Shown here: positions 7,367 through 50,900 of the stretch, one piece after another | Numbering within the stretch: position 1 is the first letter of the stretch | How the letters are laid out: each line of letters starts with the position of its first letter | Assembly: GCF_001194135.2 (NCBI RefSeq) | Contig: NC_068998.1 | Span: 48,665,095-48,723,181 of the forward strand | DNA from: Octopus bimaculoides | Lineage: Eukaryota | Length of the DNA: 58,087 bases | Direction: 5' to 3' | The notes under the pieces: generated by a model | The model's input: the letters and a program-made list of their open reading frames with translations, nothing else | The model's database searches: none | What the model was told of the DNA's origin: nothing | Position numbers and translations under genes: made by a program

Positions 7367-7367
<1 letters not shown>

Positions 7368-7401
<34 letters not shown>

Positions 7402-12279: not shown

Positions 12280-12860
12280 GGCGGCGAGCTGGCAGAGTCG
12301 GTAGCACGCCGGACGAAATGCTTAGCGGTATTTCGTCTGCCGTTACGTTCTGAGTTCAAATTCCGCCGAGGTCGACTTTGCCTTGCATCCTTTCGGAGTC
12401 GATTAAATAAGTACCAGTTACGTGCTGGGAATTGATGTAATCGACTTAATCCCTTTGCCTGTCCTTGTTTGTCCCCTCTATGTTTAGCCCCTTGTGGGCA
12501 ATAAAGAAATGAATATTAACCTAGTGGAGGGTGGCGAGCTGGCAGAAACGTTAGCACGCCGAGCGAAATGCTTAGCGGCATTTCGCCTGTCTTTACGTTC
12601 GAGATCAAATTCCGCCGAAGTCGACTTTGTCTTTCATCCTTTCGAGGTCGATAAATTAAGTACCAGTTGCGTGCTGGGTCGATCTAATCGACTGGCTCAT
12701 TTCCCAAAAATTTCGAGCCTTGTGCTTAGAGTAGAAAAGAATATCTTTAAAGCGGCGAGCTATCAGAAACGTTAGCGGGCGAAATGCCTAGCGGTATTTC
12801 ATCTGCCGAAGTCGACTTTGCCTTTTATCCTTTTGAGGTCGATAAATTAAGTACCAGTTA
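12280..12860 (+). mobile_element. Three tandem tRNA-derived SINEs (family C, Meta-domain-like core)
   Basis: Each begins GGCGGCGAGCTGGCAGA and has the core GTCGACTTTGCCTTTCATCCTTTCGGGGTCGAT..AAGTACCAG. Further copies at ~13495-13680, 23676-23880, 28745-29122 and 41492-41706. Confidence 0.75.
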
Positions 12861-13289
12861 NNNNNNNNNNNNNNNNNNNNNNNNNNNNNNNNNNNNNNNN
12901 NNNNNNNNNNNNNNNNNNNNNNNNNNNNNNNNNNNNNNNNNNNNNNNNNNNNNNNNNNNNNNNNNNNNNNNNNNNNNNNNNNNNNNNNNNNNNNNNNNNN
13001 NNNNNNNNNNNNNNNNNNNNNNNNNNNNNNNNNNNNNNNNNNNNNNNNNNNNNNNNNNNNNNNNNNNNNNNNNNNNNNNNNNNNNNNNNNNNNNNNNNNN
13101 NNNNNNNNNNNNNNNNNNNNNNNNNNNNNNNNNNNNNNNNNNNNNNNNNNNNNNNNNNNNNNNNNNNNNNNNNNNNNNNNNNNNNNNNNNNNNNNNNNNN
13201 NNNNNNNNNNNNNNNNNNNNNNNNNNNNNNNNNNNNNNNNNNNNNNNNNNNNNNNNNNNNNNNNNNNNNNNNNNNNNNNNNNNNNNNNN

Positions 13290-13488
13290 CAGAAACAGGA
13301 AATAAGAGTGAGAGAACGTTGTGGTGAAAGAGTACAGCAGGGTTCGCCACCATCCCCTGCCGGAGCCTTGTGGAGCTTTTAGGTGTTTTCGCTCAATAAA
13401 CACTCACAACGCCCGGTCTGGGAATCGAAACCGCGATCCTATGACCGCGAGTCCGCTGCCCTAACCACTGGGCCATTGCGCCTCCACA
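13290..13488 (-). mobile_element. tRNA-derived SINE family A (5' half)
   Basis: Matches 8700-8866; complete tRNA-like head; rest in the gap. Confidence 0.8.
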
Positions 13489-19600: not shown

Positions 19601-20118
19601 GTAAGAAACGCATGTAGCAAAACTCAAAGCACTGCTGACGAGATTCTGCACAAAACCTCTTGGTTGTTGAAAGATTTTAGCCACTTCCCAGATGGTCTTC
19701 TGTTTCCACACTTCAAACAACATCAAGGTTAGATAAAATCGGTTCACAGCAAATTCATCAACAGGCTACAAGATAAACAAACAGAGAAAAAGAAAAATGA
19801 AGGCAAAGAGTCTTACAGTCTTCAGATGTTGAAATTTTGATAGAGATATTATTTATATTATTTGCATTATTTACATTTGACGGATATTTGTCCTCATCTT
19901 GTTTGTTGTTAACACAACGTTTCGGCTGATATACCCTCCAGCCTTCATCAGGTGTCTTGGGGAAATTTCAAACCTGGGTTAAGACCAATACACCATATGC
20001 CCAAGGCATGAATTTATAAAATATTTTCAGACGGTCAATTCATTAATAATTGCTTTCTGTTAGTAACCGTTACATACTAAATTAATAAGCATCTTTCTCC
20101 ATTATAATATAGATATAT

Positions 20119-20151
<33 letters not shown>

Positions 20152-26100: not shown

Positions 26101-29100
26101 AAGGAAGACAAAGGAAAAATAAAAATATATTCGTCCTCAGCCGCCTGGATTACTGCTCACAGCTGTGGTCACCCACCAGTCTGAAATTAACAGCAGACCT
26201 TGAAGCAATCCAGAGGAGATTCACAAAGAAGATTGTCTCTTTGCAACTGGTCAGCTACTGGGAAAGGCTGAAACAGCTAAGACTCTACTCCCTGGAGAGA
26301 AGGCGGGAGAGGTATGCAGTAATATACATCTGGAAGATCCTGGAAGGAATTGTGCCAAATTTTGGCATTGAAAGCTACACCAATGCCAGAACGGGACGGC
26401 ACTGCATAGTGCCAAAGATCCCNNNNNNNNNNNNNNNNNNNNNNNNNNNNNNNNNNNNNNNNNNNNNNNNNNNNNNNNNNNNNNNNNNNNNNNNNNNNNN
26501 NNNNNNNNNNNNNNNNNNNNNNNNNNNNNNNNNNNNNNNNNNNNNNNNNNNNNNNNNNNNNNNNNNNNNNNNNNNNNNNNNNNNNNNNNNNNNNNNNNNN
26601 NNNNNNNNNNNNNNNNNNNNNNNNNNNNNNNNNNNNNNNNNNNNNNNNNNNNNNNNNNNNNNNNNNNNNNNNNNNNNNNNNNNNNNNNNNNNNNNNNNNN
26701 NNNNNNNNNNNNNNNNNNNNNNNNNNNNNNNNNNNNNNNNNNNNNNNNNNNNNNNNNNNNNNNNNNNNNNNNNNNNNNNNNNNNNNNNNNNNNNNNNNNN
26801 NNNNNNNNNNNNNNNNNNNNNNNNNNNNNNNNNNNNNNNNNNNNNNNNNNNNNNNNNNNNNNNNNNNNNNNNNNNNNNNNNNNNNNNNNTATATACACAC
26901 ATATATACATACACACACGCACACATACACATATATGCATTTATGCATGTATGTGTATCTTTGTGTTTGTCCCTCCAACATCACTTGAATACCAGTGATG
27001 GTTTATTTATGTCCCTGCAACTGAACAGTTTGAGAAAAGAGTCCAACTGAATGAGCACCAGACTTAAAACTCAAGCACCGGGGCCGATTTGTTCAACTAA
27101 ACACTGCAAGGCTGTATCCCAGCATGGCCACAGCCGAATGACTAAAACAAGCAAAACAAACGGAAAATATGAATCAAAATGGTATAAAGACATTCCATAC
27201 CTTTTATATTTGGCCAACATTTTGGTCAGCATGGTTGCCACATTTTCACAGTTTTTCTTTGTGGAACAAAATACCAAACATGAGTTGTCAGGAATGACTT
27301 CCAATACGAGACCCAGCAGATGGTCAGGATCTATTTTGCACATTTCCTTTTTGTACTGAAATAAGAAACAATACAAGAATCTTTAACCCTTCAGCATTCG
27401 GATTATTGCATCAATGTGTAATGCTTATTTATTATTCATTGCTTTGAAATTAATGATACATCACCTTATATACTCTTTTACTTGTTTCAGACATTTGACT
27501 GTAGCCATGCTGGAGCACCGCTTTAGTTGAGCAAATCGATCCCAGGACTTATTCTTTGTAAGCCTAGTACTTATTCTATCAGTCTCTTTTTGCCAAACCG
27601 CTAAGTTATGGGGACGTAAACACACCAGCATTGGTTGTCAAGCGATGATGGGGGGACAAACACAGACACACAAACATATATATATATACATATGCATATA
27701 TATACGACGGGCTTCTTTCAGTTTCCATCTACCAAATCCACTCACAAGGCTTTGGTCGGCCTGAGGCTATAGTAGAAGACACTTGCCCAAGGTGCCATGC
27801 AGTGGGACTGAACCCGGAACCATGTGGTTGGTAAGCAAGCTACTTACCACACAGCCACTCCTGCACCNNNNNNNNNNNNNNNNNNNNNNNNNNNNNNNNN
27901 NNNNNNNNNNNNNNNNNNNNNNNNNNNNNNNNNNNNNNNNNNNNNNNNNNNNNNNNNNNNNNNNNNNNNNNNNNNNNNNNNNNNNNNNNNNNNNNNNNNN
28001 NNNNNNNNNNNNNNNNNNNNNNNNNNNNNNNNCAAGGGTCTTCTACTATAGCCTCGGGCCAACCAAAGCCTTGTGAGTGGATTTGGTAGAGGGAAACTGA
28101 AAGAAGCCCATCGTATATGTGTGTGGGGGGGGGGATCCCTGCAACACTGCTTGACAATTAATGCTGGTGTGTTTACGTCCCCATAACTTAGCGGTTTGGC
28201 AAAAAGAGACTGATAGAATAAGTACTGGGCTTACAAAGAATACGTCCTGGGGTCGATTTGCTCGACTAAAAGTTGACTGAAACAAATAAAAGAATAGTCC
28301 ACCTCTTAAGAGATCAGAGAAATCGTTTAAAAATCAGTTACCAAATTTTTTTTTTTTTTTGTTAAATGTGTAAAACAAAATACAAAAATTAATAACAAAC
28401 CTGAAATGTGGCCACTCTGTTATGAACTAGGATCTCTTCTGAAAATTTTGGACATACACGATAGATATTGTCGTCAAGCTTGATGTATTCAGTGAGTGTA
28501 ACCTTTTTTTAAAAACAAAATATAGCAGATCAAAGAATAAATGAGAAAAGATTAAGTTTAGAGACCATTGCTCCTCCACTCCCCCTCTACACACACATAA
28601 ACAAAAAGTCAAATCTTAACAGTAAAACCATAATGATGTGTCCCTGGACAATAACCGGTATGTAACCCAGGCTATATTTTCTTAATGTATGTTTAAGCAA
28701 CATTAATCATGGACTCAAATCAACGCTTTTACTGGACCATACTCATTTATCTCAGTTCTGAGTTCAAATTCCAACGAGGTCGATTTTGCCTTTCATCCTT
28801 TCAGGGGTCGATAAATTAAGTACCAGTTGCATACTGGTGTAGATCTAATCAACTGGGCCTCCTCCCAAAAAATTTCGGGTCTTGTGCCTAGAGTAGAAAA
28901 GAATCGTTAGCATGCCAGGCGAAATGCTTAGCGGTATTTCGTCTACCGTTACGTTCTGAGTTCAAATTCTGCCGAGGTCAACTTTGCTTTTCATCCTTTT
29001 GGGTTTTGGGGTTGATTAAATAAGTACCAGTTACACACTGGGGTTGATGTAATTGACTTAATCCCTCTGTCTGTCCTTGTTTTTCCCCTCTATGTTTAGC

Positions 29101-29998
29101 CCCCTGTGAGCAATAAAGAAAAGAATATATAAATATGATATCTGGGTGTGCCTCTTTCTGCCCCAACATAGGCATATGTACGCATGGGAATGTGTACACC
29201 TTGCTCAGAGTTGCACTAAACACTAATTGAGATGTTGTAGCCTTATTTACACTGCCCTAACTTTAGTGGTTTGGCAAAAGTGACCGATACAATAAGCACC
29301 AGGCCTTAAAATAAATACCAGGATCAATTGTTCAGCTAAACCCTTCCTAAACCCTTCAAGGCAGGGCTCCAGTATGGCCACAGTCTAGAGAATGAAACGA
29401 GTAAAAGATGAAAGATATTACTCACAGGTCGAAAATCATTTATGTAAAGCTCTGCCTTCAGGAATGTCTTCAGGTCGTTGATGTTACTTAATGTGGCACT
29501 CATACCAATTATTTGGCAGGAATCTGTAAGAAGGGAAAAACCAACCATCAACAACAATATTTAGCAGATGACAAACGACAACAGCAAAATTTCTTTCAAC
29601 TAGAAGCATTCAAATCATTTTCCTACTTTAGATGTTTTTGCAAACAACTTGCACATGCAAGTGCTACCAGTCGAGAACTCCACATACCGGAAGCCAGCAA
29701 GTGTAGGGGGTCATCAAGAGAGAATGTGCGCTGTTTCAGGGCCTACCTCTCGATGGCATCATTGCGCACAGGTTCCTCTCACTGATATGAGGCCCCACTT
29801 GCTAGATCAACTGGTTATCAAATAAAGCTCAATAGAGATGCAGGAGTGACTGTGTGGTAAGTAGCTTGCTTACCAACCATGTGGTTCTGAGTTCAGTCCC
29901 ACTGCGTGGCGCCTTGGACAAGTGTCTTCTACTATAGCCTCGGGCCGACCAAAGCCTTGTGAGTGGATTTGGTAGACAGAAACTGAAAGAAGCCTGTC

Positions 29999-30036
<38 letters not shown>

Positions 30037-33000
30037 GTGTGTGTGTGTGTGTGTGTGTGTATTGCTGTTTGTCCCCCCACCATCGCTTGACAACCGATGT
30101 TGGTGTATTTATGTCCCTGTAACATAGCGGTTACAGGGACATGATCTCCTTAATGTATAATAATGCCATAAAACATAAGACTGTACTTCAGTAGTTCAAG
30201 TCGAAGTTACTTACATCCATAACTTAAAGTTTTAATTAAAGTTGCTTCCAGCACAGCACCTCTGCGCCCTCCTTCACCCAACATGTGCAGCTGAAACAGA
30301 AAGTTGAAATTCTCTTATATTAAATATATTTTACAGAAAATTCTAGATTAAAATCTACATATTTTGAATCAGTGCTTCATTGAAATAGTTACAGTAGTTG
30401 ACATCAAACCAAGAGGTCAATAGTTCATATTTCATCATCAACTTTTTCATGCTTGCATGGGTCTGTTGTGGTGGATTTTCTATGGCTGAATGCCCTTCCT
30501 GTCAGATGGAATTTGAGCCAGCTTTTATCTACAAATGCCGTTCCTGTCACCAATCCTCACCTGTTTCCAAGCAAGGCAATATTCTCCGATGACCATTCAT
30601 GTCTCAAAAGATTCGAAAAAACAAAAGGACACTGCTGTATGACCACGTTTGGATGGGGCTTTTTACATACCACTGTCACGAGGAGCCAGTCAGGCAGCTC
30701 TGGCAGTGACCCACGCATGAATGAATGGTGCTTACCGCGTGCCACCAGCACTGGTAACAGCCACAACTACAATTTCCTCATGTCTTTTCTAAAAGATATT
30801 AGAGTCAAAGTTGAATAAAATTGTTCCAACTGGCAATAGACACACACACACACACACATAAATGAAAAGAAAGATCACTGGCGTCCGTCCAAGTTTCTGT
30901 ATAAGACTACAATAGAGATGTAATGTTACCGTGCTCTCTCTCTCTCTCTCTACATATATGCAAACATCCATAAGCATTTTTTTTTTAGAGATGAGGAATA
31001 ATGTACATTATTTACATTTGACGGATATTTGTCCTCATTTTCTTTGTTGTTAACACAAGGTTTTAGTTGATATACATTCCAGCCCTCATCAGGTGTCTTG
31101 GGGAAATTTCGAATCTGGATTCTCATTCCCACAGGCATATGGTACAGTGGTTAAGAGCGTTGGCTATTAACCTCAAGATTTCGAGTTCGATTCCAGGCAG
31201 TGACCTGAATAATAATAATAACATCGAAAAATACCTTAGGAATGAGAACCCAAGACACCTGATGAAGGCTGGAGGGTATATCAGCCGAAACTCTGTGTTA
31301 ACAACAAACAAGATGAGGACAAATATCCGTCAAATGTAAATAATATCCATAAGCATGTCTAAGCATTTTTATGTTTTGTCAAATATAATCAAGAGCATAT
31401 ACATCATGATTACTATTGCTTAAATAAATTTTTAAAAAATTAACAACAAACAAAAGCCTTACTTCATCAACAACCATCAATCCCAGTTTGCCCATTCGAT
31501 TCAGTTCAATAAATTGATTAATCAAACTGTGAGCCTTCTCAATGGTTGCAATATACAGGGTTCCCTTCTGGGGACGATTAATTGGTGGGTAACGACCTTT
31601 GCTCCCTGCATACTCTTCTACATGGAAGTTCAATTCAACAGCCAGTTCTGCAATGGCCTTCACCTTGGTTGAAAGACAACAAATGACGATTATGGATTTA
31701 TTTTTATCATTAGATAGCTGAAACAATAGACTTCTAGATTTTAAAAGCATTATTTACAGCAACATTGAGTGCACCCATCTCCTTTATTTTATTATATTCT
31801 ATAATAAGTAATTAATTACTGACATGTCAGCATTAATATTCATTTATTTATGCGCCCTTTTCAAGCCTAGCCAGGCTCATGGGCCCGATTTCCCAGTTTC
31901 TATGGCGTATGTGTTCTCCCCAGCTGGACGGGACATCAGTCTATCGTAGCATTACTCAAGAAACAGGAAGAAAGAGTGAAAGAAAGTTGGGGCGAAAGAG
32001 TACCACAGGGGTCGCCACCACCCTCTGCTGGAGCCTTGTGGAGCTTTTAAGTTTTCCATGCTAGCATGGGTTGGACGATTTGACTGAAGACTGGCGAACC
32101 AGATGGCTGCACCAGGCTCCAATCTGATCTGGCAGAGTTTCTACAGCTGGATGCCCTTCCTAACGCCAAATACTCCAAGAGTGTAGTGGGTTCTTTTACG
32201 TGCCACCGACACAAGGGCCAGTCAGGCGGTACTGGCAACGTGTGTGTAGTAAATATAAAGCAAACAAGATATGCTGATGATAAAGTGAGGGTCACTGTAT
32301 GACATCTAAAATACAAAAGTGATAATGATGATAGTGGAATCATCAGACCACTAGCATAGCTGGGGAGGGCGGTCCGCTCTGGGTGGCACTTTTGGGTCTG
32401 GTGTAGGCAATATGTGTTTTTTGTAGGATCTGGGAGCAGCAAATGGAAGAGCCACCCTGGGTGGTACACACTCTGGCTACACTAGTGCATTAGACATAAT
32501 ATGGGATGATTTTGATAATAAATATTTGTGGTCAGACTTTACCTTTTCTTGTACGATTGAAACGTAAGGTAGGACTAACATGGCGTTTTTCTTTTGGCAC
32601 AGCAACTGTCGAAGAATGAGTATTTCAGCAACAAGAGTCTTGCCACCACTTGTAGGCAAAGAGTAAATGAGATTCTGATTGGTTGATTGTTCAGCTAATG
32701 ATAAACACTCTTCCTGCCAATCTAAGATGAAGACATAAATAAACTGATTTTGATAAAACAATGTAGTTGATCAAAAAGTAATGTCGTTTACAATTGTTCA
32801 TCAACAAAACAGCCAATGCTTTGACAAACACACATGCAATCATTAACACACGCACACACACACATACTATTTGGTTTCTGTCAACTTTTTAAAAAAACAC
32901 AAAAAAGGTGGCTGAGTGATAAGTAGATTGTTTACCAACCACATGGTTCTGGGTTCAGCCCCACTGCGTCGCACCTTGGGCAAGTGTCTTCTACTATAGC

Positions 33001-33088
33001 CTCGAGCCGACCAAAGCCTTGTGAGTGGATTTGGTAGACGGAAACTGAAAGAAGCCCATCGTATATATATATATATATATATATTATA

Positions 33089-33166
<78 letters not shown>

Positions 33167-35488
33167 CATGTGTGTGTGTGTGTGTGTGTATATGCTTATG
33201 TGTCTGTTTTTGTCCCGCCAACATTGCTTGACAACCGATGCTGGATTGTTTACGTCCCCGTAACTTAGCGGTTCGGCAAAAGCGACACGATAGAATAAGT
33301 ACTTGGCTTACAAAGAATAAGATCCTCGGGTTGATTTGCTCGACTGAAGGCGGTGCTCCAGCATGGCCGCAGTCAAATGTGTGAAACAAGTAAAAGAGTA
33401 AAAAGAATAACAGAATATCAACAGAATCTTAACTCACCATAAAGTTTCTTGATGCCTCTCTGTTTCTCAAAGAGTTCTTTGACTTTCAAAGGAAGACCAT
33501 AGAATGGTCCAATATCAAAATTGCCAACGCCCATCTCCTTCTCTTTCTGCACAATTTCAAGACCTGCTTCTGCTTCAGCACGCCTATCATGTTGCATTTT
33601 CTCAACGTATTTAGCAATGTTTTGCGAAGTGTGCCCTTGAGCATTCTGGAATAGGCGCTGGTGGATGTGTTTCTTTAGAAAAGATGTACCCATGGTCTTT
33701 GGATTTGAAGAGGTTTTCGAATTTGTATCATCTTCCTTAGAAAGGACACTTTCTTCCTAAACAAGTTGAAAACAAAGGTTATGATTCAAACATGAAGTGG
33801 ACAAATATCCGTCAAATGTAAATAATGTAAATAATTTAAATAATGTGCAAAGAATATGAGTTGAGAAAAAATATCATCATCATCATCAGCCTTAACAAAT
33901 TCCATCTAACCCATGGAAATGTGGAGAAATGAATATTAAACAAAGAAGATAATCACATTAGACACACCAGATAATGCATTCTATAGATAACCTTACTCAC
34001 TTTCGAAGAATTTTTGACTTGTTTCTCCTCCTGGTTCTTGAAATGATTCAGAGATTTCTTTTTGATTTCAAAATCATCATTTCCAAAGATTGAATCTAAC
34101 ATTGTTGAGATTGATGAGGAGAACATATCACTCTGGGAACTACGAGTTGGTGAAAAATGGTCGGCATCTACCGACTCTTTAGAAAGCTTTCTTCGGAAAG
34201 GGCTGGATTCTGAGACTTTTGCACTGCTGGTTTTAGTCGAATCTTTTGCTGGTTTGTGAAGTGGAGACAGACTGAAAAGTTCGGTCGAATAAGTTTTGAC
34301 TGAGTGAGGTAGATGCTGACCAGAAAAGAGATCAGCGCTTTCAGATTGTACAATAATTTCATCTGGTGGTGTTTCATATAATCCAGTAACTGTTTTATTT
34401 CCTTGAAATTCTTCTGTTCTGTCATTACAGAATTTTTTCTGTTGCTGGACGGCACCAACAAAATGTGTGAGCTGAGCTGTTTGTGGGGCATTTTGCTGCC
34501 TGTCATACTGAATAGCAATTCCAGAAATATCAAGCTCTGCTAGATCAGCATCACTGTTCTCAAATAAATCTCCCTCATCATCACAATCACCATCATCTAT
34601 TAAAATATCCTGAAAATAAAATAAGAAGTGCCAGAGAAAGGTATGTAATGCACCACTCCACAATTCCATCCTGGTAATCAACAACTTGACTGAAATAGGC
34701 ATCAAATCTGTCCCTCACCCTCCCTCCAGTCCTAACCATGCTCCCTGTAACTTTTGGTCGTTTCCCCAAGCTGAAGCAGATGAGACACCTTTAGGCAGAG
34801 GACTTCAGTTTGGAGGACTTCCATGGGGCCTTCATGAAGTAGCCAGAGCACTACAACAAATGCAATGAAGTCATCATATCTTACTTTGAAGGAGATTAGA
34901 GTTTGGTACTTCTTTGAAATTAATAAAAGTCTTTCCTGAAAAAGTCTCAAAACTTCTGGGACATAATACAGGTACACTATAAAGTAGTAATAAGTTTGAG
35001 GAATCATGTCCTTCATTTCTTTTGCAGAGAAACCAACTTTAACCCACCTCTAAATGTTGAACCAGAGGTAAAAATTAATGAAAGCAAATAAATCAAATAT
35101 CATTTTTCACAGTGTCAATAAAGGAAAACTTTTTTTTAAGAAATACCTGAGATAAATGTGTTGATGACAGTTTTTTAGATTCTTTTCTACAGTGGCCACT
35201 TGTTTTTATTGGACGTATCATCTGTTCTGAATTTTTGGGATTCGAGATGTTTGCATAACCTTCCTCTGCAAATGTGCTCTTAAACCAAATTTGTTTTTTC
35301 TGAGGGGAAATTTTTGATGATGAGGCTTTAGTGGCAACTCCAGATGAACGTTGTGAGGAGTTTTCCGTTTGATTATCTTCAGTCTTCCTTCTGCTTGCTG
35401 ACGGAAACTGAAGGCTATAATGAGACAATGCTCTTTTCTGTACTCTCGCCTTACGGCATGGGCCTTCTTCAATAACATCATCATTCAT
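16695..35488 (-). CDS. HELQ: Helicase POLQ-like (HELQ/HEL308), Ski2-like SF2 helicase, 19 coding exons, 1241 aa
   Basis: Exons (minus): 35488-35147, 34609-34001, 33756-33438, 32721-32543, 31663-31463, 30290-30215, 29523-29426, 28502-28401, 27355-27201, 24909-24670, 23559-23418, 22743-22639, 22120-21868, 21495-21338, 20328-20230, 19765-19592, 18952-18839, 17725-17591, 16919-16695. All introns GT-AG with consistent phases; total 3726 nt. Motifs: [69 protein letters not shown], Hh[12 protein letters not shown]. No polymerase domain, so not POLQ. Confidence 0.96.
17973..18197 (+). mobile_element. piggyBac-like MITE (diverged)
   Basis: TTAA at both ends with imperfect TIRs (TTAATCTTTTAGCATT ... 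AATGCTGTAGGGTTAA). Related pieces at ~17035-17210, 19035-19130 and 27383-27460. Confidence 0.6.
19863..19982 (-). mobile_element. 3' part of tRNA-headed hammerhead-bearing element (family D)
   Basis: Matches the 3' halves of the elements at 31134-31345, 38620-39050 and 40694-41098. Confidence 0.8.
19911..19956 (-). ncRNA. Minimal type I hammerhead ribozyme motif (intact core)
   Basis: GACAC-CUGAUGA-A-GGCUG-gagggtatat-CAGCC-GAA-AC-GU-U-GUGUU: stem I GACAC/GUGUU, stem II GGCUG/CAGCC, loopless palindromic stem III ACGU, GUU cleavage triplet. Confidence 0.75.
26138..26422 (+). pseudogene. CR1/L2-group LINE ORF2 C-terminal fragment in a HELQ intron
   Basis: [12 protein letters not shown]...[12 protein letters not shown]...[21 protein letters not shown]; runs into a gap. 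Confidence 0.8.
27472..27866 (-). mobile_element. CORE-type SINE family B (full length)
   Basis: tRNA head, CACCTTGGGCAAGTGTCTT core (CORE-like), internal (TA/CA)n, tail CTCCAGCATGGCTACAGTCAAATG. Confidence 0.8.
28033..28294 (+). mobile_element. CORE-type SINE family B, inverted relative to 27472-27866
   Basis: Direct sequence match; head lost in the gap. Confidence 0.75.
29840..30130 (+). mobile_element. CORE-type SINE family B (3'-truncated)
   Basis: Head and core match 32907-33408. Confidence 0.8.
31000..31345. mobile_element. Family D inverted dimer: minus 3' part (31000-31129) plus full plus-strand element (31134-31345)
   Basis: tRNA-like head with A box TGGTACAGTGG and B box GAGTTCGATTCC, (AAT)n, then the hammerhead segment at 31254-31299 (stem III mutated). 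Confidence 0.8.
31842..32048 (-). mobile_element. SINE with family A core but a different 3' tail
   Basis: AAGCTCCACAAGGCTCC...GGTGGCGACCCCTGTGGTACTCTTTC...CTTCCTGTTTCT as in family A, then an unrelated tail ending (TAAA)n. Confidence 0.6.
32907..33408 (+). mobile_element. CORE-type SINE family B (full length, representative)
   Basis: tRNA head GGTGGCTGAGTGATAAG...GGGTTCAGCCCC, CORE-like CACCTTGGGCAAGTGTCTT, internal (TA)n(TG)n, tail GGCGGTGCTCCAGCATGGCCGCAGTCAAATG...(AAAAGA)n. Other copies at ~8040-8180, 23090-23240, 39311-39710, 44980-45065, 51950-52045, 53410-53690, 54800-55130, 56157-56370 and 56985-57290. Confidence 0.85.
34687..34965 (+). pseudogene. Mariner transposase 3' remnant in a HELQ intron
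   Basis: [25 protein letters not shown] corresponds to the decayed HPPYSPDLAPCDF motif. Confidence 0.7.
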
Positions 35489-36089
35489 AGCAGTCCCTAT
35501 CAAGGGTGCATGAACTAACAGCAGGCTGACAGATCTGAAATAAGTTGTGCACATATATTAGCTAAACATACAAAACAAATGGGATACAATGCAATGTTTG
35601 CAGTAAACTCTATCGAAAACTGTTTTGAGTTCAAATCCCATCAGAGGTGACTTCACGTTTCCTCACTGCACCCATCTGGAAAAGTAACTGCAACTTACAG
35701 ACTAGTTTCTTTGAGATTTGCCTCTAAACTTTCATACTGTACCGATCCCTCCTGTCTGAACTTGGATTCATGGACAGGCTAACATTACGCAACATGGTAA
35801 CATAAACCTATAAGAATTGGATGAGATATGATGGCTCGGCCGTCTCTCCCCAGTTCTTATATTAATCATTAAAATTCAGAAATACAACAACACGAGGGAT
35901 AACGGTAACAACAGATCAATAGTTTATTCTAGGTTGGTGTAGAGCCGTTTCGTTCCTGGGTAAATAGGCATGCCACTAGAATACCAAAGGAAGCTTCGAC
36001 CACATGTCGGTATCGAGCTGAGAGAATACGTGTTGTCACCACCGCTGCTGGAGAGAAAAGAGATCGGACGCTATAGCTTTCTCTCCACC

Positions 36090-40316: not shown

Positions 40317-43021
40317 ATGTCAGAGAGGTCTAATAGAAGGCGAAAACTTCCACAGTGGATGCTGTCTTTGGTCAGTTCCAATACTGAAACTACAAGAGAT
40401 TCTGATAATAATCAGTTTGATGCCAATTGTGATGTTGAGTCAGAAGATAATGACATAGAAGAGCTCTCTAAGTATTGGTTTATCTTTTATTAAATATTTT
40501 TGGTTATCTCTAATCCTATGCCTGTCCAAAGCATTTTCATAAGTTTGTCTTAAATGTTCATATTTAAATGTCATGTATGACCTATAGACACTAGGAAAAT
40601 CTGTTTTGTATATCACATGTAATACTAAGGACAGACAAAGAGTTAATAACTCGTCAAACATAAAGATTCAAAGTTTTACAAAACAATTTAGCATGTACAT
40701 TATTTACATTATTTACATTTGACAGATATTTGTCCTCATCTTGTTTGTTGTTAACACGTTTCGACTGATACACCCTCCAGCCTTCATCAGGTGTCTTGGG
40801 AAAATTTCGAACGTGAGTTCTCATTCCTAAGGTATTTTTCAGTGTTGTTATTATTATTATTATTATTATTATTGTTATTATAATTCAAGTTATTGCCTAG
40901 AATCGAACACAGAATCTTGGGGTTAGTAGACCCTGCTATTAACCACTGCGCCATATGCCCGTGGGCACCTGATGAAGGCTGGAGGGTATATCAGCCAAGA
41001 CGTTGTGTTAACAGCAAACAAGATGAGGACAAATATCCGTCAAACATAAATAATGTATATAATGTACATAATTCCTCATCTCTTAAATATAGAACTAAAT
41101 TAGCATGTATTAGCACATGGTTGGGAAGCAAGCTTCTTAACTTCAATGCCTTGTCTGCACCAAATTTTGCCGAATTACAGTCACCATAATTAATTGGTTA
41201 CTTGCTGCCTTATTGCATTATTTTTGAGATAATGATTGTACATTATTAAGAAATGTAGTTGGTTTATCATATTTCCAACAGCCTTGACCGAGCCAATACA
41301 GTAATGTATATGATGAGTGAACAAGAGCTGCTACATATTGCCATGAAAACACTTCATACGGTAAGACTAAAGTTGCATATGATGCTTGTCCTAATTCAGC
41401 ATGAATCACCATTTCCACCACTAATGAGGGTTGGACAATCCCCACATTATCTCACCACTCATTTCCCATTGGTCACATTATTATTATTATTGGTGAGCTG
41501 GCAGAATCGTTAGCACGCCAGGCAAAATGTTTAACTGCATTTCGCTCGTCTTCACTTTTTGAGTTCAAATTCCGCCGAGGTCGACTTTGCCTTTCATCCT
41601 TTCGGGGTCGATTAAATAAGTACCCGTTACGCACTGGGGTCGATGTAATCGACTGAAACCCTTTGTCTGTCCTTGTTTAGCCCCCTGTGGGCAATAAAGA
41701 AATAAGTTGTTCATAGTTGATAATCCAGCCTGAGAGTCTAACAACAGTTAGAGAAAATCTTCCATTTCTAACCCTAAATTCCATAAGCCTTCATATATTT
41801 GACCAACAGTGCTACATAATAGTGCTACATGTACCCTGAATGCAGAGGATATGAAGACTGGAAAGGAAGCTGGTTGTACAATGCCAGTGTGCATGTGCAA
41901 CAAAGTGCAAATGTGTTGGGAGAAAAATTTAGCAGAACACGAAAAGCTGGTGGCATGCCAAAACACACCCAGTACTCTCTGTGAAGTGGCTGGTTTTAGG
42001 AAGGGCGTCCAACCATAGAAACCATGCCAAAGATAATACTGAAGCTCAACCCAGCTTGCCGGTCCTGTCAAACCGTCTGACCCATGCCAGCATGAAAAAC
42101 ATGTTAAATAATGAAATAAGCAACAGATATATGCAAGGTAAAATACTGTGCTGGTATGGTTATGTGATGCATACGGATAGACTCCTGCGTAACAAGGTGC
42201 CTGATGATATGTATTTTTGTTGGTCTTTTTATGTGTGTGTGTGTGTGTGTGTAAAAGCACCCATTACACATTACACTCTCAGAGTGGTTGGCATTAGGAA
42301 GGGCATCCAGCTGCTGAAAATTATGCCAAATCACACTGGAGTCTGGTGCAGCATGCCAGCATAGACAACAAACGTTAAATGATGATGATGATGATGTGTG
42401 TACGCATGAATTTTAATTGCATATATTATCCTTAGTTCTTTCCTATTTTTGATTTGATTTTAGGAAAATGAAGATCTTCGCTCTGATGAAACACTCACCA
42501 CAAAACCTACAAAAATATGTTTCAGAAACAAAACTCTTGTTAACTTTCAATCATCCAGTCATTGGAACCAAGTAAATTCTGTTGCTATTAATGATAACAG
42601 CATTGATGATAATGACAGTGAAGACAACCAAAGAAGGGTTGATACGAGGCGTCCTCACATGAAAATCGAATCTCATAAGAAAATTAATGATTCTGTTAAA
42701 AACAAGAAATTAAAAACAAAGACACCAAAGACTTCTGTAAATATTCATCAAATAAGGAAAGATACTGAACCAGTTCCTCCAGATACATTGTCTGGTCACA
42801 GCCATCAAAAAACCACAGGTACAATATTGACTAATCGAGATATTGAGACAGATCAGATGGCAACAAACAAAGACATTCATATTAATAACAAACAGTGGAC
42901 AGATGAAAATATTCAAAAGGATAAAAATGGCTCCACTTTACCCTTCACTATATTCAGCTCCAGAGAAACAATCTCTCGTCAAAAACCCGATCTGTCAATT
43001 TTAGATGAAATATTTTTGTAA
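40317..43021 (+). CDS. CYREN: CYREN/MRI (C7orf49)-like NHEJ regulator, 3 coding exons, 263 aa
   Basis: Exons 40317-40471, 41282-41360 and 42464-43021 with GT-AG junctions and matching phases (2, 0). Protein MSERSNRRRKLPQWM... (R-x-L-P-x-W Ku-binding motif), NTVMYMMSEQELLHIAMKTL (aligns ungapped with human TRTVYCMNEAEIVDVALGIL as I recall it), C-terminus PDLSILDEIFL* (human VLKYVREIFFS*). Confidence 0.78.
40694..41098. mobile_element. Family D inverted dimer (full minus element 40694-40965 plus plus-strand hammerhead/3' part)
   Basis: Minus-strand tRNA-like head (TGGCGCAGTGG...GTTCGATTC) abuts CACCTGATGAAGG; both hammerheads carry core mutations. Confidence 0.8.
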
Positions 43022-45140: not shown

Positions 45141-46388
45141 TCAGTTTAAGGGCTTCCCTCCAGAATGTATTCGTTCATGTCTTTTTAAAAGAGTGCTTGT
45201 GATAAATGATTTCTCACAGATGTCACAGTGATAGGGCTTCTCTCCAGTGTGAATCAGTTTGTGTCTGTTTAAATCGCTATTATTGACAAAGGATTTCCCA
45301 CAAACTTCACAAGGACAGGGTTTTTCCCCGGTGTGTCTACGTTTGTGACTTACAAGATCAGAATTCCGATTGAAGGATTTGCCACACATCTCACAAAGAT
45401 AAGACTTTTCTCCTGTATGTATCTGCTTGTGGACGACGAGAGTTGAATTTTTACAGAATGCATTGCCACATATATCACAGCGATATGGCTTTTCTCCCGT
45501 ATGTATTTGCGTGTGGCGTTTTAAATCATGATTTTTAAGGAAAGCTTTCCCACATATTTCACAAGGATACGGCTTCACTCCGGTGTGTATTTTTTTGTGC
45601 GTATTCAAGTGGCCATTGGTGAGAAAGGCTTTTCCACATACCTCACAACAGTAAGGTTTCTCACCAGAGTGCATCAGTACGTGTATTGTAAGTTGTGAAT
45701 TCACATAGAACGACTTGCCGCATATCTCACAGTGATAAGGTTTTTCTCCAGTGTGAACTCGCTCATGACTTTTTAAATCACTACTATTCACAAAAGTCTT
45801 CCCACACAGTTCACAGTGATAGGGCTGTTCTCCTGTATGTCTACGTATGTGAATTGTAAGCTTGGAATTTTCAATGAAAGACTTACCACATATTTCGCAA
45901 TGAAATGGGTTTTCTCCTGTGTGTATTCGTTTATGTCTTGTTAAATTACTACTATCAACAAAAGATTTTCCACAAACTCCACAATGATATGGCTTCTCTC
46001 CTGTGTGACTACGTATATGGATAACAAGAGCCGAATTATTAAGAAAAGATTTTCCACAAATTTCACAGTGAAATTGTTTTTCTCCTGTATGTATTCTCAT
46101 GTGATTCGTTAAAACACTGTTATACACAAAAGACTTTCCACATATATCACAGTGGTACGGTTTCTTCTTATTGTGTATTTCTTGGTGTGTGAAAAATTCA
46201 CGTTCTGAAGAGAACGTTTTCTTGCAATTCTCACACTTATATTCCGGAATTTTTCTTTCCACTGAACTTTGATTCGTGAACGTTTTAGTAAGTAAAACTT
46301 TCTCTCCGCTGCATGTCTGTGTAATTGAACCTATACCGTTGAAAACAGGTGTCTCGTTACGAGACTCCAAGTAATTCACATCTTCCAT
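45141..46388 (-). CDS. C2H2 zinc-finger protein, 13 tandem fingers, 415 aa, single coding exon
   Basis: 13 CxxC-x12-HxxxH repeats with TGEKP-type linkers; short N-terminus without a recognisable effector domain; splice acceptor at 46585-46587 upstream of the ATG. Confidence 0.92.
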   Translation of the reverse strand: MEDVNYLESRNETPVFNGIGSITQTCSGEKVLLTKTFTNQSSVERKIPEYKCENCKKTFSSEREFFTHQEIHNKKKPYHCDICGKSFVYNSVLTNHMRIHTGEKQFHCEICGKSFLNNSALVIHIRSHTGEKPYHCGVCGKSFVDSSNLTRHKRIHTGENPFHCEICGKSFIENSKLTIHIRRHTGEQPYHCELCGKTFVNSSDLKSHERVHTGEKPYHCEICGKSFYVNSQLTIHVLMHSGEKPYCCEVCGKAFLTNGHLNTHKKIHTGVKPYPCEICGKAFLKNHDLKRHTQIHTGEKPYRCDICGNAFCKNSTLVVHKQIHTGEKSYLCEMCGKSFNRNSDLVSHKRRHTGEKPCPCEVCGKSFVNNSDLNRHKLIHTGEKPYHCDICEKSFITSTLLKRHERIHSGGKPLN

Positions 46389-47931: not shown

Positions 47932-50900
47932 ATGTCACCACGCGGGAGGCGATTGAGCCCCAAAACTTTATGCACCGATATCGTTGACGATGAAAGAATT
48001 ATTCGCGAGTCCTGGACATTTTGTGATCTCGTTCAACATATTTCGACAAATGATAAGGCAATTGCCTGGTTGGCGAAATATAAGCTTATAAGCAATTCTG
48101 TTACATGTCCAGCTTGTGGGAACCCGTGTACAATCATCGGCTATAAGCAAGGAATTGACGGAAAACGATGGAGATGCCCAAATCATAATTTCTCTCGATC
48201 GATTCGTAAAGGATCCGTTTTCGAGAACAGTCGTCTCTCGTTGACAACATTTACATGGCTTATGTATATGTGGTCGAGGGATTATCTGCTTTTCGAAATG
48301 GGCCATGAGACAAACGTTTGTATGAAGTCGATTATCGATCTGATCCGACTGGTCCGAGAATTATTAGAACGGTTCCTAGAAGATCATCCGGCTGAATTAG
48401 GTGATGTCCCACCCGAGATTGGAGGGTTCGATTTAGAGACAGGTGAACCAAAAATCGTTGAAATAGATGTAACTAAATTTGTTAAATCTAAACGTAATGA
48501 AAAGAAACATGCGAAAGAATTTTGGATTTTTGGTGGAATCGAACGGGGAACTGAGAAATGCTTTCTAGTACCTATTGAGTATCAAAATAAAGAAGCTTTC
48601 GAAGCTGCAATTATCCGATGGATTTTACCAGGTATGGTTTATAAAATCCGGTTTCTCTTTTATTTGTATCATCTTCAATCTGCTTTTAAATTTAGTTTCG
48701 CTGGGACCATTCTTTACCCCATCCCCTCTAATCACGCCTGTCGTTCTTTAGTTTTAACGCCAATGGCTCGTTAGAATTTGTGGTGTGTTAAACTTAAAGG
48801 AAGTTAGTATCATTAAAGCGAATGGTCATCTCTGGCGGATTGGTACTAAGTATCAACGCGCCTTCTAAGATACAAACTTCTTGTTTTAAAGATATCTAAA
48901 TTCTTCCATCAAAATTTCTTGTTAATTTATGTTCCTTACATCAGCTTAATAATGTCAAGTTTTTTGCTGAATATGTTATTTTCGAAATTATTTAAAGCAA
49001 AGGAAATTTATTTCCACATAAATAACAAGAGGATTTTTAGCATAAGTACAGATTAGTGCCACAGCTTTTCGTATAACTTTCTGAAAAGGGCAATTTTTTT
49101 AATGAAACTCTGTAGAAGTATGTTTGGGAGGGTATAGATTACAATTGTGTTCACATGAAACGAGATATATACATGTATGAGTGTGTATATATATATATGT
49201 GTGTGTGTGTGGCAGGCTTCTTTCAGTGACTGTTTATCAAATCCACTCCCAAGGCTTTGTCAGAGCTGTACAAGCCATGTACAGTGGTGTTGTCAGTAGG
49301 GTGCGCATCAGCCATGAGTACAGTGATGAATTTAGTGTACAGGTAGGGGTTCACCAGGACTCAGTTCTCACTCCACTCTTATTCGTCATAGTCCCCCAGG
49401 CCATAACAGAGGAACTCAAAACTGGATGCCCATGCGAACTACTATATGCTGAGGACCTTGCGCTTATTGGAGAAGATATTCCAGGTATGGAAGTAAAACC
49501 TGGAATCAAAGGACTTTAAAGTTAAGCTTCCAAAGACCAAAGTTGTTAACAAGTAAGAAGATAAGAACTCTTTCCGTTAGGTAAACGGCCCTGCTCAATA
49601 TGTAGGAAAGGAGTTGAAAGTAATTCCATTCGCTGCATCCAGTGTAAGCAGGTAGATTAACAAATAAGGTCATCTTTGTATGTGGCAGATGTGCAGGAAC
49701 AATAAGCACGAAGAGCACACAGGAATTAGAGTCTCTCAAATGCCCAAGAGGCTCTCTTGAGGTTGTAGATAGTTTCTCTTACCTAGGTGACCAAATTAGC
49801 AATGATGGAGGGTGTTCTGAAGGTATTGTTTCTAGAATAAGAATAGGATGGAGGAAGTTCAGAGAGCTATTACCTCCGTTGACAACAAAAGGACTCTGAG
49901 AGTGAAAGGTAGATTGTATGATACTTGTGTACAAACAGCTGTACTTTATAATAGTAAGACATGGGCTCTGAATGTAGAAGATATGCGTAGACTAGAGAGG
50001 AATAAAGGTAGTATGTATTGATGGATGTGCAACATCAGTGTGCTTGAACGACAAAGTGCAGATGTGTTGAGAGAAAAGTTGGGCATGCAAGAGAGAAGAC
50101 TATGTTGGTTTGGACATGTGATGCATATGAATGAAGATAACTGTATAAAGAAATATGCCTATCACTGAAAGTGGGTGGCACCTGTGGAGGAGAGAAGCCC
50201 TGGAAGACATGGGATGAAGTGGTGAGGACCAATCTCAGGATGTTGGGCCTCACAGAGGAGATGACGATGGAGTGAAATGTCTGACGAGATGAGGTTCTGG
50301 AGAAGACCCACCCACTTCAACGAAACTGAGTTCTAGTCTCCGTTTTTAGGCCATCATATGTAATTTGAGAGAGATTCGGCTGCTAAATTTAACAGGTCAA
50401 GAGGCCAAGTAGTGGCCTTCTCATTTATTTACATACATATACTCTCACTGTGCGTGTCCACAATATGTCTTAGTTAAAGGACTGACTTGAGAAAACCTGG
50501 AATGTTCCGTCCATTCTGAGAAACTGTTAAGTTTATATTAAATTTCTAAGTTACCTCCCTTGGTACGAATTTATCCTCAGCAAACCGAACACTTTATTTG
50601 AAATATTTTGCCTCTTTTTTTTTTTTTTTACCCCCCAAAGAACCAACTCTGGAACTACTTTCCTGCCCATTATACTTTTTTCAACAGTCGTCACCTTTCA
50701 ACAAATTCAAGCTGAAAGTCAATCACATTGACTTCCAGTGTTTCAGGCTACAGGAGAAATTTTATGGTTAGACATGGAATCAATGAAAACCAATATTAAA
50801 GAAATGACTAAAATTGACTGCGATTGCTGTGTGATAGAAATATATTTTTTATGATATTGAATCATTTTGCTAAAATAACACTTACGCTAACTTCAATATA

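What the first reader, a model, noticed from the sequence alone, without database searches (positions are those of the whole stretch)
40317..43021. Invertebrate CYREN/MRI orthologue hidden in three short exons
Not visible as a whole in the ORF track. Manual splicing gives 263 aa with three separate motifs in the same order as vertebrate CYREN: KBM RKLPQWM at residues 9-15, central YMMSEQELLHIAM, and terminal LSILDEIFL*. Each lies in a different exon with compatible phases, which is unlikely by chance. CYREN has been studied almost only in vertebrates, and the disordered linkers make it hard to detect by BLAST, so this may be unannotated and would imply a bilaterian-age NHEJ adaptor.
Basis: partly seen in the sequence, partly recalled or inferred. 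Interest (0 to 1): 0.8.

Follow-up and report, generated by a model that had tools for sequence, protein, structure and literature searches.

The report
Octopus orthologue of CYREN/MRI
A small three-exon octopus gene, so far listed only as "uncharacterized", encodes a very divergent counterpart of the vertebrate DNA-break-repair adaptor CYREN/MRI, so this supposedly vertebrate-restricted Ku-binding factor is probably much older.

Summary
Exons 40317-40471, 41282-41360 and 42464-43021 (+) splice through GT..AG introns into a 263-aa ORF with the three motifs at the stated residues. The product is identical to NCBI "uncharacterized protein LOC106877878 [Octopus bimaculoides]", so the gene model exists but has no function assigned.

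The CYREN/MRI reading is supported by four lines of evidence:
- **Profile match:** a vertebrate-only profile of 147 CYRENs scores the octopus proteins 27.6-29.9 bits (E about 1e-6 at proteome scale; best of 5000 shuffles 10.4). hhalign gives 93.8% probability, P = 1.7e-7, over the Ku-binding motif plus the central domain.
- **C-terminal motif:** the C-terminal 9-mer matches the vertebrate C-terminal motif (p about 1e-3).
- **Gene structure:** there are three coding exons with intron phases 2 and 0. Intron 2 lies exactly 17 codons after the invariant Tyr in gibbon, bichir and octopus.
- **Bridging sequences:** marine-metagenome miniproteins match both the vertebrate-only and the octopus-only profiles.

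Pfam MRI does not detect the protein, but it also misses most fish CYRENs tested.

Inferred function: a disordered adaptor that binds Ku80 and probably multimerises and binds ERCC6L2. This is a new, first non-vertebrate member of a known family. Binding is untested.

The parts
40317..40471 (+). Coding exon 1 (155 nt; Met1 to the first two bases of codon 52). [quoted passage not shown]
   Evidence: ATG at 40317, donor AA|gtattg at 40471/40472. Identical to the RefSeq product P0001. 91% nt identity to O. sinensis exon 1.
40335..40367 (+). APLF-type Ku-binding motif (A-KBM), residues R7-S17: RRRKLPQWMLS. R9, L11, P12, W14 and M15 align with human MRI R11, L13, P14, W16 and L17.
   Evidence: These columns are invariant in alignment A1. 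Human MRI-A peptide SETKTRVLPSWLTA and the W-dependence of binding are from PMC4831024. Met at the +1 position after Trp is the dominant, higher-affinity state (bioRxiv 10.64898/2026.07.22.740027).
40472..41281 (+). Intron 1 (810 nt, GT..AG, phase 2, inside codon N52). It contains a hairpin-type repeat element.
   Evidence: Phase 2 also in gibbon, bichir, teleost and O. sinensis.
41282..41360 (+). Coding exon 2 (79 nt; codons 52-78). This is the small middle exon that encodes the conserved central domain. In vertebrates this exon is 64-97 nt (76 nt in gibbon).
   Evidence: 97.5% nt identity to O. sinensis, the best conserved segment of the locus.
41298..41360 (+). Central domain core T58-T78: TVMYMMSEQELLHIAMKTLHT. 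It corresponds to the human MRI 52-71 beta-strand TVY plus an amphipathic helix. In human this region is the multimerisation domain (MuD) and carries the ERCC6L2-HEBO-binding strand.
   Evidence: T58, V59, Y61, M63, E65, E67, A72 and L76 are invariant in A1. HMM and hhalign alignments cover it. AF2 predicts a helix at 65-81 with pLDDT 75-84.
41361..42463 (+). Intron 2 (1103 nt, GTAAGA..AG, phase 0, between T78 and E79). It contains a SINE-like repeat.
   Evidence: It has the same position (17 codons after the invariant Tyr) and the same phase as in gibbon (E71|S72) and bichir (K69|R70).
42464..43021 (+). Coding exon 3 (558 nt including the TAA stop). It encodes a long disordered, low-complexity linker (about 175 aa, roughly twice the vertebrate length) and the C-terminal motif.
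   Evidence: AF2 pLDDT is mostly below 50 across the linker. dN/dS for the linkers is 0.54.
42992..43018 (+). C-terminal XLF-like motif candidate L255-L263: LSILDEIFL, followed directly by the stop codon. It aligns with vertebrate L[KQ][YL]V[RQ][ED]IFF(S/T)*.
   Evidence: E260, I261 and F262 are invariant in A1. The PSSM score is 5.0 bits, with p of about 1e-3 for a random C-terminus, and this is the best window in the protein. AF2 predicts a short helix at 256-262. The last 60 residues are identical in the three octopus species.

Best explanation
The locus is the Octopus bimaculoides orthologue of vertebrate CYREN/MRI. It encodes a 263-aa, mostly disordered 'beads-on-a-string' adaptor of non-homologous end joining.

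Shown here:
- The gene model and its conservation within Octopus.
- Statistically supported homology of the N-terminal KBM plus the central domain to vertebrate CYREN.
- A C-terminal EIF-type motif at the very end of the protein.
- The same three-coding-exon layout, with intron phases 2 and 0.

Inferred from the vertebrate literature:
- The N-terminal RRRKLPQWM peptide docks into the hydrophobic pocket of the Ku80 vWA domain at DNA ends.
- The central TV(M)Y strand plus amphipathic helix drives self-association and/or pairs with the HEBO domain of ERCC6L2, so the protein bridges Ku to other factors.
- The C-terminal ...LDEIFL acts as a second, XLF-like contact.
- The long linkers serve only as flexible tethers and evolve fast. 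This explains why BLAST and Pfam miss the relationship.
For: 1. Gene model: exact RefSeq match and O. sinensis/O. vulgaris orthologues. Exons are more conserved than introns. dN/dS is 0.25 in the motif segments against 0.54 in the linkers.
2. Homology: a vertebrate-only HMM of 147 sequences, with no octopus rows, scores P0002 at 29.9 bits (E = 1.3e-6) and P0001 at 27.6 bits (E = 6.5e-6) at Z = 30000. The best of 5000 shuffles scores 10.4 bits. hhalign local gives Prob 93.8%, P = 1.7e-7, over residues 2-103. MAFFT aligns all three motifs unaided.
3. C-terminal motif: p of about 1e-3, at the true C-terminus.
4. Gene structure: gibbon exons are 137/76/261 nt and octopus exons 155/79/558 nt, both with phases 2 and 0. 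Intron 2 is at the identical aligned codon boundary in gibbon, bichir and octopus. Intron 1 is phase 2 in all five genes examined.
5. Bridging: Tara/ENA miniproteins P0260, P0270 and P0272 score 32-48 bits against the vertebrate-only HMM and 22-31 bits against the octopus-only HMM.
6. Functional residues: residues reported as important in human MRI are largely kept. For Ku binding these are R11, P14 and W16. For ERCC6L2 binding they are T52, V53 and Y54. Of the eight residues mutated in the multimerisation-defective 4A4D construct, Y54, M56 and L69 are identical in octopus. C55M, N57S, V64I and L66M are conservative changes. I68 is replaced by T75.
7. Order/disorder: AF2 shows order only at 13-16, 65-81 and 256-262, mirroring human MRI.
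8. Other domains: none are detected.
Against: - Pfam PF15325 gives no hit even at E <= 10.
- At whole-database scale (1.8e9 sequences) 28-30 bits would not be significant.
- The octopus query alone recovered only Octopus proteins, so no squid or other mollusc orthologue supports continuity.
- The rep-search profile that ranked the octopus protein highly contained octopus rows and is circular for that point.
- The C-terminal motif lacks the adjacent basic residue (D259 where vertebrates have R/Q) and ends in Leu instead of Phe-Ser.
- Intron 1 sits 8-9 codons before the Tyr in gibbon and octopus but 4 codons before it in bichir and teleost. The teleost intron 2 is shifted by 10 codons, so positions are not absolutely fixed.
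- No binding or expression data were available.
Confidence: 0.8

Rival explanations
1. A lineage-specific cephalopod disordered protein has independently acquired Ku-binding-type short linear motifs. It works like CYREN, APLF or WRN tails but does not descend from the CYREN gene.
For: Short linear motifs arise easily. The minimal KBM R-x-x-P-x-W occurs in more than 600 human proteins (PMC4831024). The octopus KBM is as close to APLF's as to MRI's. No hits were found outside Octopus with the octopus query. Pfam MRI is negative.
Against: Convergence would have to reproduce four things together. These are a roughly 20-residue strand-helix domain (eight invariant columns), the motif order, the terminal position of the third motif, and the three-exon structure with phases 2 and 0 and an identically placed intron 2. 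Metagenomic intermediates link the two groups.
Confidence: 0.1
2. The resemblance is chance in a low-complexity, fast-evolving protein of unrelated function, and there is no link to NHEJ.
For: The protein is rich in N, D, K, S and T. HMMER bias terms are high (11-17 bits). The mammal-only profile gave only 9-14 bits.
Against: The octopus scores lie 17-20 bits above the best of 5000 composition-matched shuffles. hhalign gives P = 1.7e-7. The matches fall in the non-low-complexity, most conserved segments (exon 2 is 97.5% identical between species). The C-terminal p-value and the intron evidence are independent of these.
Confidence: 0.05
3. It is a fragment or derivative of another KBM-bearing repair protein (APLF, WRN, XLF/PAXX, or a PNKP-like fusion as reported for sea urchin) rather than CYREN.
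For: The KBM RKRKLPxWML resembles the APLF and WRN KBMs. A sea-urchin PNKP-like protein fused to an MRI-like KBM is reported (bioRxiv 10.1101/2023.05.26.542399).
Against: Pfam finds no FHA, PBZ, exonuclease, helicase, XRCC4-like head or kinase/phosphatase domain, and PDB sequence search finds no match. The ORF is complete from ATG to stop in three exons and is conserved as such in O. sinensis. The central domain is CYREN-specific.
Confidence: 0.03

Closest known systems
Vertebrate CYREN / MRI (C7orf49; human isoform CYREN-1/MRI-1, 157 aa)
   Same: - N-terminal A-KBM with the R, L-P and W-M residues.
- Central TVY strand plus amphipathic helix, which in human is the multimerisation domain and the ERCC6L2-binding strand.
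- C-terminal ...EIF(F/L) motif at the extreme end.
- Intrinsically disordered linkers.
- Three coding exons with the central domain on a small middle exon.
- Intron phases 2 and 0, with intron 2 at the identical codon boundary.
   Different: - 263 aa against about 130-200 aa.
- The second linker is about twice as long and N/D/K-rich rather than S/P/E-rich.
- The first linker is acidic, whereas in vertebrates it is basic (KRRR).
- YMMS replaces YCMN.
- There is one extra residue before the Tyr. This is also seen in lungfish, bichir and several other, mostly unidentified, hits (TVVYCL, SIVYCM, SVFYCM).
- The C-terminus is LDEIFL* rather than V(R/Q)EIFFS*.
- It falls below Pfam PF15325 detection.
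APLF (and the WRN N- and C-terminal tails): other A-KBM carriers
   Same: The same type of Ku80-vWA-binding peptide (basic patch, L-P-x-W-M) embedded in disordered sequence. WRN also pairs a KBM with an XLF-like motif (PMC4831024).
   Different: APLF has FHA and PBZ domains, and WRN has exonuclease and helicase domains. The octopus protein has none of these. It has the CYREN-specific central domain and places the KBM at the extreme N-terminus.
Marine-metagenome KBM+central-domain miniproteins (P0260/P0270, P0272; Tara Oceans/ENA contigs L003-L006)
   Same: The KBM is nearly identical (RKRKLPEWMLSP against RRRKLPQWMLSL), and the same central motif follows (V(V/T)(Y/F)IMSPKEL..VALE(M/I)L). They match both the vertebrate and the octopus profiles.
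   Different: - Only 75-92 aa, stopping straight after the helix, so there is no second linker and no C-terminal motif.
- Intronless.
- Packed 14 nt upstream of a GH20 hexosaminidase gene in an operon-like array.
- The organism is unknown. Its uL11 is closest to mammalian mitoribosomal uL11m.

Membership tests
CYREN/MRI | N-terminal APLF-type Ku-binding motif (basic residues, L-P-x-W-[ML]) within the first ~20 residues | tested here: met
   RRRKLPQWM at residues 7-15. R9, L11, P12 and W14 are invariant with 14 mammalian CYRENs and are covered by the HMM and hhalign alignments.
CYREN/MRI | Conserved central domain (human residues 49-81: TVYCMNE strand plus amphipathic helix; MuD and ERCC6L2-binding strand) | tested here: met
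   TVMYMMSEQELLHIAMKTLHTE aligns with it. T58, V59, Y61, M63, E65, E67, A72 and L76 are invariant. It contributes most of the 27.6-29.9-bit profile score. AF2 predicts a helix at 65-81.
CYREN/MRI | C-terminal XLF-like motif (basic patch, then a conserved aromatic residue at the extreme C-terminus) | tested here: inconclusive
   LSILDEIFL* shares L..(V/L).EIF and the terminal position (p of about 1e-3). D259 replaces the vertebrate R/Q, and the nearest basic residues are R250 and K252. HMMER local alignments did not extend to it.
CYREN/MRI | Match to Pfam PF15325 (MRI) at or above the 27-bit gathering score | tested here: not met
   No hit at E <= 10 for P0001, P0002 or P0003. Calibration: recalled human CYREN scores 170.9 bits. 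Five of eight fish proteins that carry all three CYREN motifs score only 14.6-23.8 bits, and NCBI names two of those five CYREN or CYREN-like. The model lacks the KBM and is mammal-centred.
CYREN/MRI | Gene structure: three coding exons, central domain on a small middle exon, intron phases 2 and 0 | tested here: met
   Octopus exons are 155/79/558 nt and gibbon exons 137/76/261 nt. The bichir and teleost middle exons are 64 and 97 nt. Phases are 2 and 0 in all. Intron 2 lies 17 codons after the Tyr in octopus, gibbon and bichir.
CYREN/MRI | Largely intrinsically disordered small protein | tested here: met
   AF2 mean pLDDT is 52, with ordered segments only at the three motifs. It is longer (263 aa) than vertebrate members.
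CYREN/MRI | Physical binding to the Ku80 vWA domain / Ku70-Ku80 and an effect on NHEJ | not testable with these tools
APLF | FHA domain and PBZ zinc fingers flanking the KBM | tested here: not met
   Pfam scan shows no FHA or PBZ domain, only noise hits at E > 2.
XLF / PAXX / XRCC4 superfamily | N-terminal head domain plus coiled coil | tested here: not met
   No Pfam hit and no PDB sequence hit. AF2 shows no globular domain.

The most novel reading that the evidence does not exclude
CYREN/MRI is not a vertebrate invention. It is an ancient (at least bilaterian) Ku-tethered bridging adaptor whose indispensable core is KBM plus the central strand-helix domain. That core is conserved from octopus to human and is present alone in compact-genome marine animals. 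[quoted passage not shown]
Probability: 0.5. Interest if true: 0.65.

Novelty: new member of a known kind. Interest (0 to 1): 0.58.

Why it matters
In the literature held here, CYREN/MRI is described as the least conserved NHEJ factor (bioRxiv 10.1101/2023.05.26.542399), and its KBM conservation is reported only among vertebrates (PMC4831024). Its role is disputed, as either an NHEJ stimulator or an S/G2 inhibitor.

A protostome orthologue moves its origin back to the protostome-deuterostome ancestor. About 550 Myr of divergence (my estimate, not computed here) also works as a natural mutagenesis screen. Only about 40 residues survive: the Ku80-binding peptide, the TVY strand plus helix recently implicated in multimerisation and ERCC6L2 binding, and the terminal EIF motif. 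This points to which interactions are the ancestral, essential ones.

The case also shows that exon-phase conservation can recover orthologues of disordered microprotein-like adaptors that BLAST and Pfam miss. It gives LOC106877878 and LOC115219763 a testable function.

Tried and rejected
- **Pfam scan** of the three octopus proteins: no MRI hit, only noise. It was kept as a failed membership criterion but shown to be uninformative.
- **PDB sequence search:** nothing.
- **Mammal-only HMM:** only 9-14 bits, not significant on its own. It was superseded by the broader vertebrate profile.
- **Word-indexed database search with the octopus protein:** only Octopus spp..
- **The same search with an octopus-plus-metagenome N-terminal profile:** only the metagenomic miniproteins.
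- **Exhaustive representative search with a mixed profile:** the 150 listed hits were almost all vertebrate-type CYRENs, so 39 weaker hits stayed unseen and no further invertebrate was recovered.
- **JGI metagenome scan** for KBM and central-domain patterns: 157 pattern matches, none confirmed.
- **Naming the Tara organism** through cluster names: no names available. Oikopleura was considered from memory and judged unlikely, because it is reported to lack Ku; this was not tested.
- **hhalign in global mode** mis-aligns the C-terminus because of the linker length difference (Prob 72%). The local mode was used instead.
- **Synteny with vertebrates:** the gibbon neighbour is TMEM140 and the octopus neighbours are a HELQ/POLQ-like helicase and a C2H2 ZNF. 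There is no shared synteny.
Full report
**1. What is in the sequence**

The window is AT-rich, repeat-laden animal DNA. Joining 40317-40471, 41282-41360 and 42464-43021 on the + strand gives a 792-nt ORF of 263 codons plus TAA. Both introns are canonical: AA|gtattg...ccaacag|CC and ACG|gtaaga...gattttag|GA. Their phases are 2 and 0.

- RKLPQWM at 9-15.
- YMMSEQELLHIAM at 61-73.
- LSILDEIFL directly before the stop codon.

The product is 100% identical, end to end, to NCBI "uncharacterized protein LOC106877878 [Octopus bimaculoides]". O. sinensis has an 83%-identical 265-aa orthologue, LOC115219763. O. vulgaris has an N-terminally truncated model. So the manual splicing is correct and the gene model already exists. 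What is missing is a name and a function.

The O. sinensis gene has the same three exons of 155, 79 and 564 nt. Between the two species the exons are 91%, 97.5% and 93% identical, against 53-85% for introns and flanks. Nei-Gojobori dN/dS is 0.50 overall, 0.25 in the three motif segments and 0.54 in the linkers; the counts are small. This is a real, constrained coding gene.

**2. Is it CYREN/MRI?**

*Standard tools are negative.* Pfam MRI (PF15325) gives no hit even at E <= 10, and no PDB chain matches.

It scores 170.9 bits on PF15325 and retrieves 295 database proteins named CYREN/MRI. Its KBM and C-terminal peptides are exactly those printed in Grundy et al. 2016: SETKTRVLPSWLTA and VLKYVREIFFS (PMC4831024).

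*Profile tests.*
- MAFFT of two octopus and 14 mammalian proteins aligns all three motifs without help. Invariant columns are R9, L11, P12 and W14; T58, V59, Y61, M63, E65, E67, A72 and L76; and E260, I261 and F262.
- A mammal-only HMM is weak, at 9-14 bits.
- An exhaustive search of 1.84 billion representatives with the mixed alignment supplied the wider vertebrate family. Look-ups of ten divergent hits identified teleosts, bichir, lungfish and paddlefish.
- From those I built a vertebrate-only HMM of 147 full-length sequences with no octopus rows. It scores O. sinensis at 29.9 bits (E = 1.3e-6) and O. bimaculoides at 27.6 bits (E = 6.5e-6) for a proteome-sized search (Z = 30000). The best of 5000 composition-matched shuffles reaches 10.4 bits.
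- Profile-profile comparison (hhalign, local mode) gives 93.8% probability, P = 1.7e-7, over residues 2-103, that is KBM plus central domain.

*C-terminal motif.* It lies outside those alignments, so I tested it separately. Against a PSSM of the vertebrate C-terminal 9-mers, LSILDEIFL scores 5.0 bits. This is reached by 0.07-0.15% of random C-termini. It is by far the best of the 255 windows in the protein; the next best scores -3.8.

*Why the Pfam negative is uninformative.* The model begins after the KBM and the TVY strand. Five of eight fish CYRENs tested score only 14.6-23.8 bits, below the 27-bit cut-off.

**3. Independent evidence: gene structure**

I solved the exon structures by exact protein-to-genome threading.

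| Gene | Coding exons (nt) | Intron phases |
|---|---|---|
| Gibbon CYREN | 137 / 76 / 261 | 2, 0 |
| Octopus | 155 / 79 / 558 | 2, 0 |

- The 3-nt difference in exon 2 is the one extra residue before the Tyr (TVMY against TV-Y). The same extra residue is present in lungfish, bichir and several other, mostly unidentified, hits (TVVYCL, SIVYCM, SVFYCM).
- Intron 2 falls exactly 17 codons after the invariant Tyr in gibbon (E71|S72), bichir (K69|R70) and octopus (T78|E79).
- Intron 1 is phase 2 in all five genes examined. It splits the aligned codon in gibbon (R46) and octopus (N52), and sits 4-5 codons closer to the motif in bichir and a teleost.
- The teleost intron 2 is shifted by 10 codons, so the positions are conserved but not immutable.

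Matching both phases and one exact position by chance is improbable. My rough estimate is 1e-3 to 1e-4; this is inference, not a computed value. This evidence is independent of the sequence scores.

**4. Bridging sequences**

The searches also returned 75-92-aa proteins from ENA and Tara Oceans metagenomes (P0260, P0270, P0272):
- MDSNSRKRKLPEWMLSPV...KPVVYIMSPKELKEVALEMLAESEEEETA*
- MEARKRKLPEWMLSPQ...KPVTFIMSPKELEEVALEILSESN*

They score 32-48 bits against the vertebrate-only HMM and 22-31 bits against an octopus-only HMM, so they link the two groups transitively.

They are intronless and lack a C-terminal motif. In L005 and L006 they sit between a mitochondrial-type uL11 gene and a GH20 hexosaminidase gene, with a 14-nt spacer before the latter. 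The shorter contig L003 shows a related arrangement. The uL11 is most similar to mammalian mitoribosomal uL11m, at 94 bits against 62 bits or less for bacterial, plant and fungal L11. This suggests an animal with a compact genome, but the organism could not be named.

**5. How it most likely works**

*Shown here:*
- The protein is predicted to be disordered (AF2 mean pLDDT 52).
- Only three local elements are ordered, and they coincide with the motifs: a turn at 13-16, a helix at 65-81 (pLDDT 75-84) and a short helix at 256-262.

*Inferred from vertebrate work:*
- **KBM.** The A-KBM binds the hydrophobic pocket of the Ku80 vWA domain and depends on the Trp (PMC4831024). Met after the Trp, as in octopus, is the common state and raises affinity about 30-fold relative to human Leu (bioRxiv 10.64898/2026.07.22.740027).
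- **Central domain.** Human residues 49-81 form a multimerisation domain made of strand 54-YCMN-57 and helix 58-81, with V64, L66, I68 and L69 mutated in the non-multimerising construct. Strand residues T52, V53 and Y54 pair with the HEBO domain of ERCC6L2, so that MRI bridges ERCC6L2 to Ku (bioRxiv 10.1101/2025.11.28.691009).
- **Octopus counterparts.** Octopus keeps T58, V59 and Y61. It has I71, M73, T75 and L76 at the four helix positions.
- **C-terminus.** The C-terminal motif would be a second, weaker contact. In human it is an X-KBM for Ku80 and has also been reported as an ATM/MRN and SF3B1 contact.

I therefore propose a Ku-anchored, self-associating tether that recruits partners to DNA ends. 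None of the binding steps has been tested for octopus.

**6. Rivals**

- Convergent assembly of short motifs, about 0.10.
- Pure chance, about 0.05.
- A fragment of APLF, WRN, XLF or a PNKP-like protein, about 0.03.

All three are disfavoured by the combination of the 20-residue central domain, the motif order and terminal placement, the intron evidence, the bridging sequences and the absence of any other domain.

The main weaknesses of the preferred reading:
- No orthologue from another mollusc was retrieved.
- Significance holds at proteome scale, not at whole-database scale.
- The basic patch in the C-terminal motif is weak.

**7. Novelty and verdict**

In the literature held here, KBM conservation in MRI is reported among vertebrates (PMC4831024). 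A eukaryote-wide survey calls CYREN/MRI the least conserved NHEJ factor; outside vertebrates it cites only a sea-urchin PNKP-like protein with an MRI-like KBM (bioRxiv 10.1101/2023.05.26.542399). I found no paper describing an invertebrate CYREN.

The finding is therefore a new, highly divergent member of a known family, and not a new kind of system. It pushes the family back to the protostome-deuterostome ancestor and pinpoints its conserved core. Interest is moderate to high for the NHEJ field and modest beyond it.

The gene model is already in RefSeq as "uncharacterized". The suggested Pfam test is negative for understandable reasons.

Noticed in passing
window ~17280-35560, minus strand: Exons of a HELQ/POLQ-like DNA-repair helicase lie head-to-head with the CYREN-like gene, about 4.8 kb between the presumed starts. 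Pfam hits are DEAD at 32480-32761, Helicase_C at 24522-24962, POLQ_helical at 19394-19747 and HHH_5 at 17282-17740 (weak, 25 bits, below its 27-bit cut-off). The same neighbour and orientation occur in O. sinensis (L002). This could be a shared bidirectional regulatory region of two DSB-repair genes, or coincidence.
   Followed up: partly
L003-L006 (ENA ERZ27288711, ERZ17092181, ERZ17293919; TARA_SAMEA2730915_METAG-scaffold_13628): Intronless 75-92-aa 'mini-CYREN' ORFs (KBM plus central domain, no C-terminal motif) occur in marine metagenome contigs. In L005 and L006 the ORF is packed between a mitochondrial-type uL11 gene and a GH20 hexosaminidase gene, with a 14-nt spacer before the latter; this looks operon-like. 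The uL11 is closest to mammalian uL11m, so the source is probably a compact-genome marine animal, but it is unidentified. In L003 the flanking ORFs look partly rearranged or chimeric.
   Followed up: partly
window 40693-41069 (intron 1): Hairpin-type repeat element. The inverted arms 40693-40757 and 41005-41069 are 92% complementary, with an (ATT)n microsatellite between them; it looks MITE-like. O. sinensis intron 1 is about 700 nt longer.
   Followed up: partly
window 41490-41700 (intron 2); also 12352, 12601, 28760, 28958: SINE-like repeat ('GAGTTCAAATTCCGCCGAGGTCGACTTTGCCTTTCATCC' core) with five copies on the + strand of the window, where none is expected by chance.
   Followed up: partly
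window 45141-46388 (-) and 47932-48774 (+): An intronless 415-aa protein with 12 C2H2 zinc fingers lies downstream on the opposite strand. It is followed by a 280-aa ORF whose O. sinensis counterpart carries a DDE_Tnp_IS1595 hit (a domesticated or decaying transposase). The window ORF itself has no Pfam hit.
   Followed up: partly
window, many sites (e.g. 4870-4990, 6900-7400, 12860-13290, 26430-26880): There are 2237 N bases in several assembly gaps, flanked by (TG/CA)n, (TA)n-like and (ACC/GGT)n microsatellites. The long 'ORFs' listed there are artefacts of the N runs.
   Followed up: no
L007 (Gouania willdenowi CYREN) versus L001 / L008: Within vertebrates the CYREN intron positions drift. 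The teleost intron 2 is 10 codons downstream of the mammal/bichir/octopus position. Fish intron 1 is 4-5 codons closer to the TVY strand than in mammals and octopus. The phases stay 2 and 0.
   Followed up: yes
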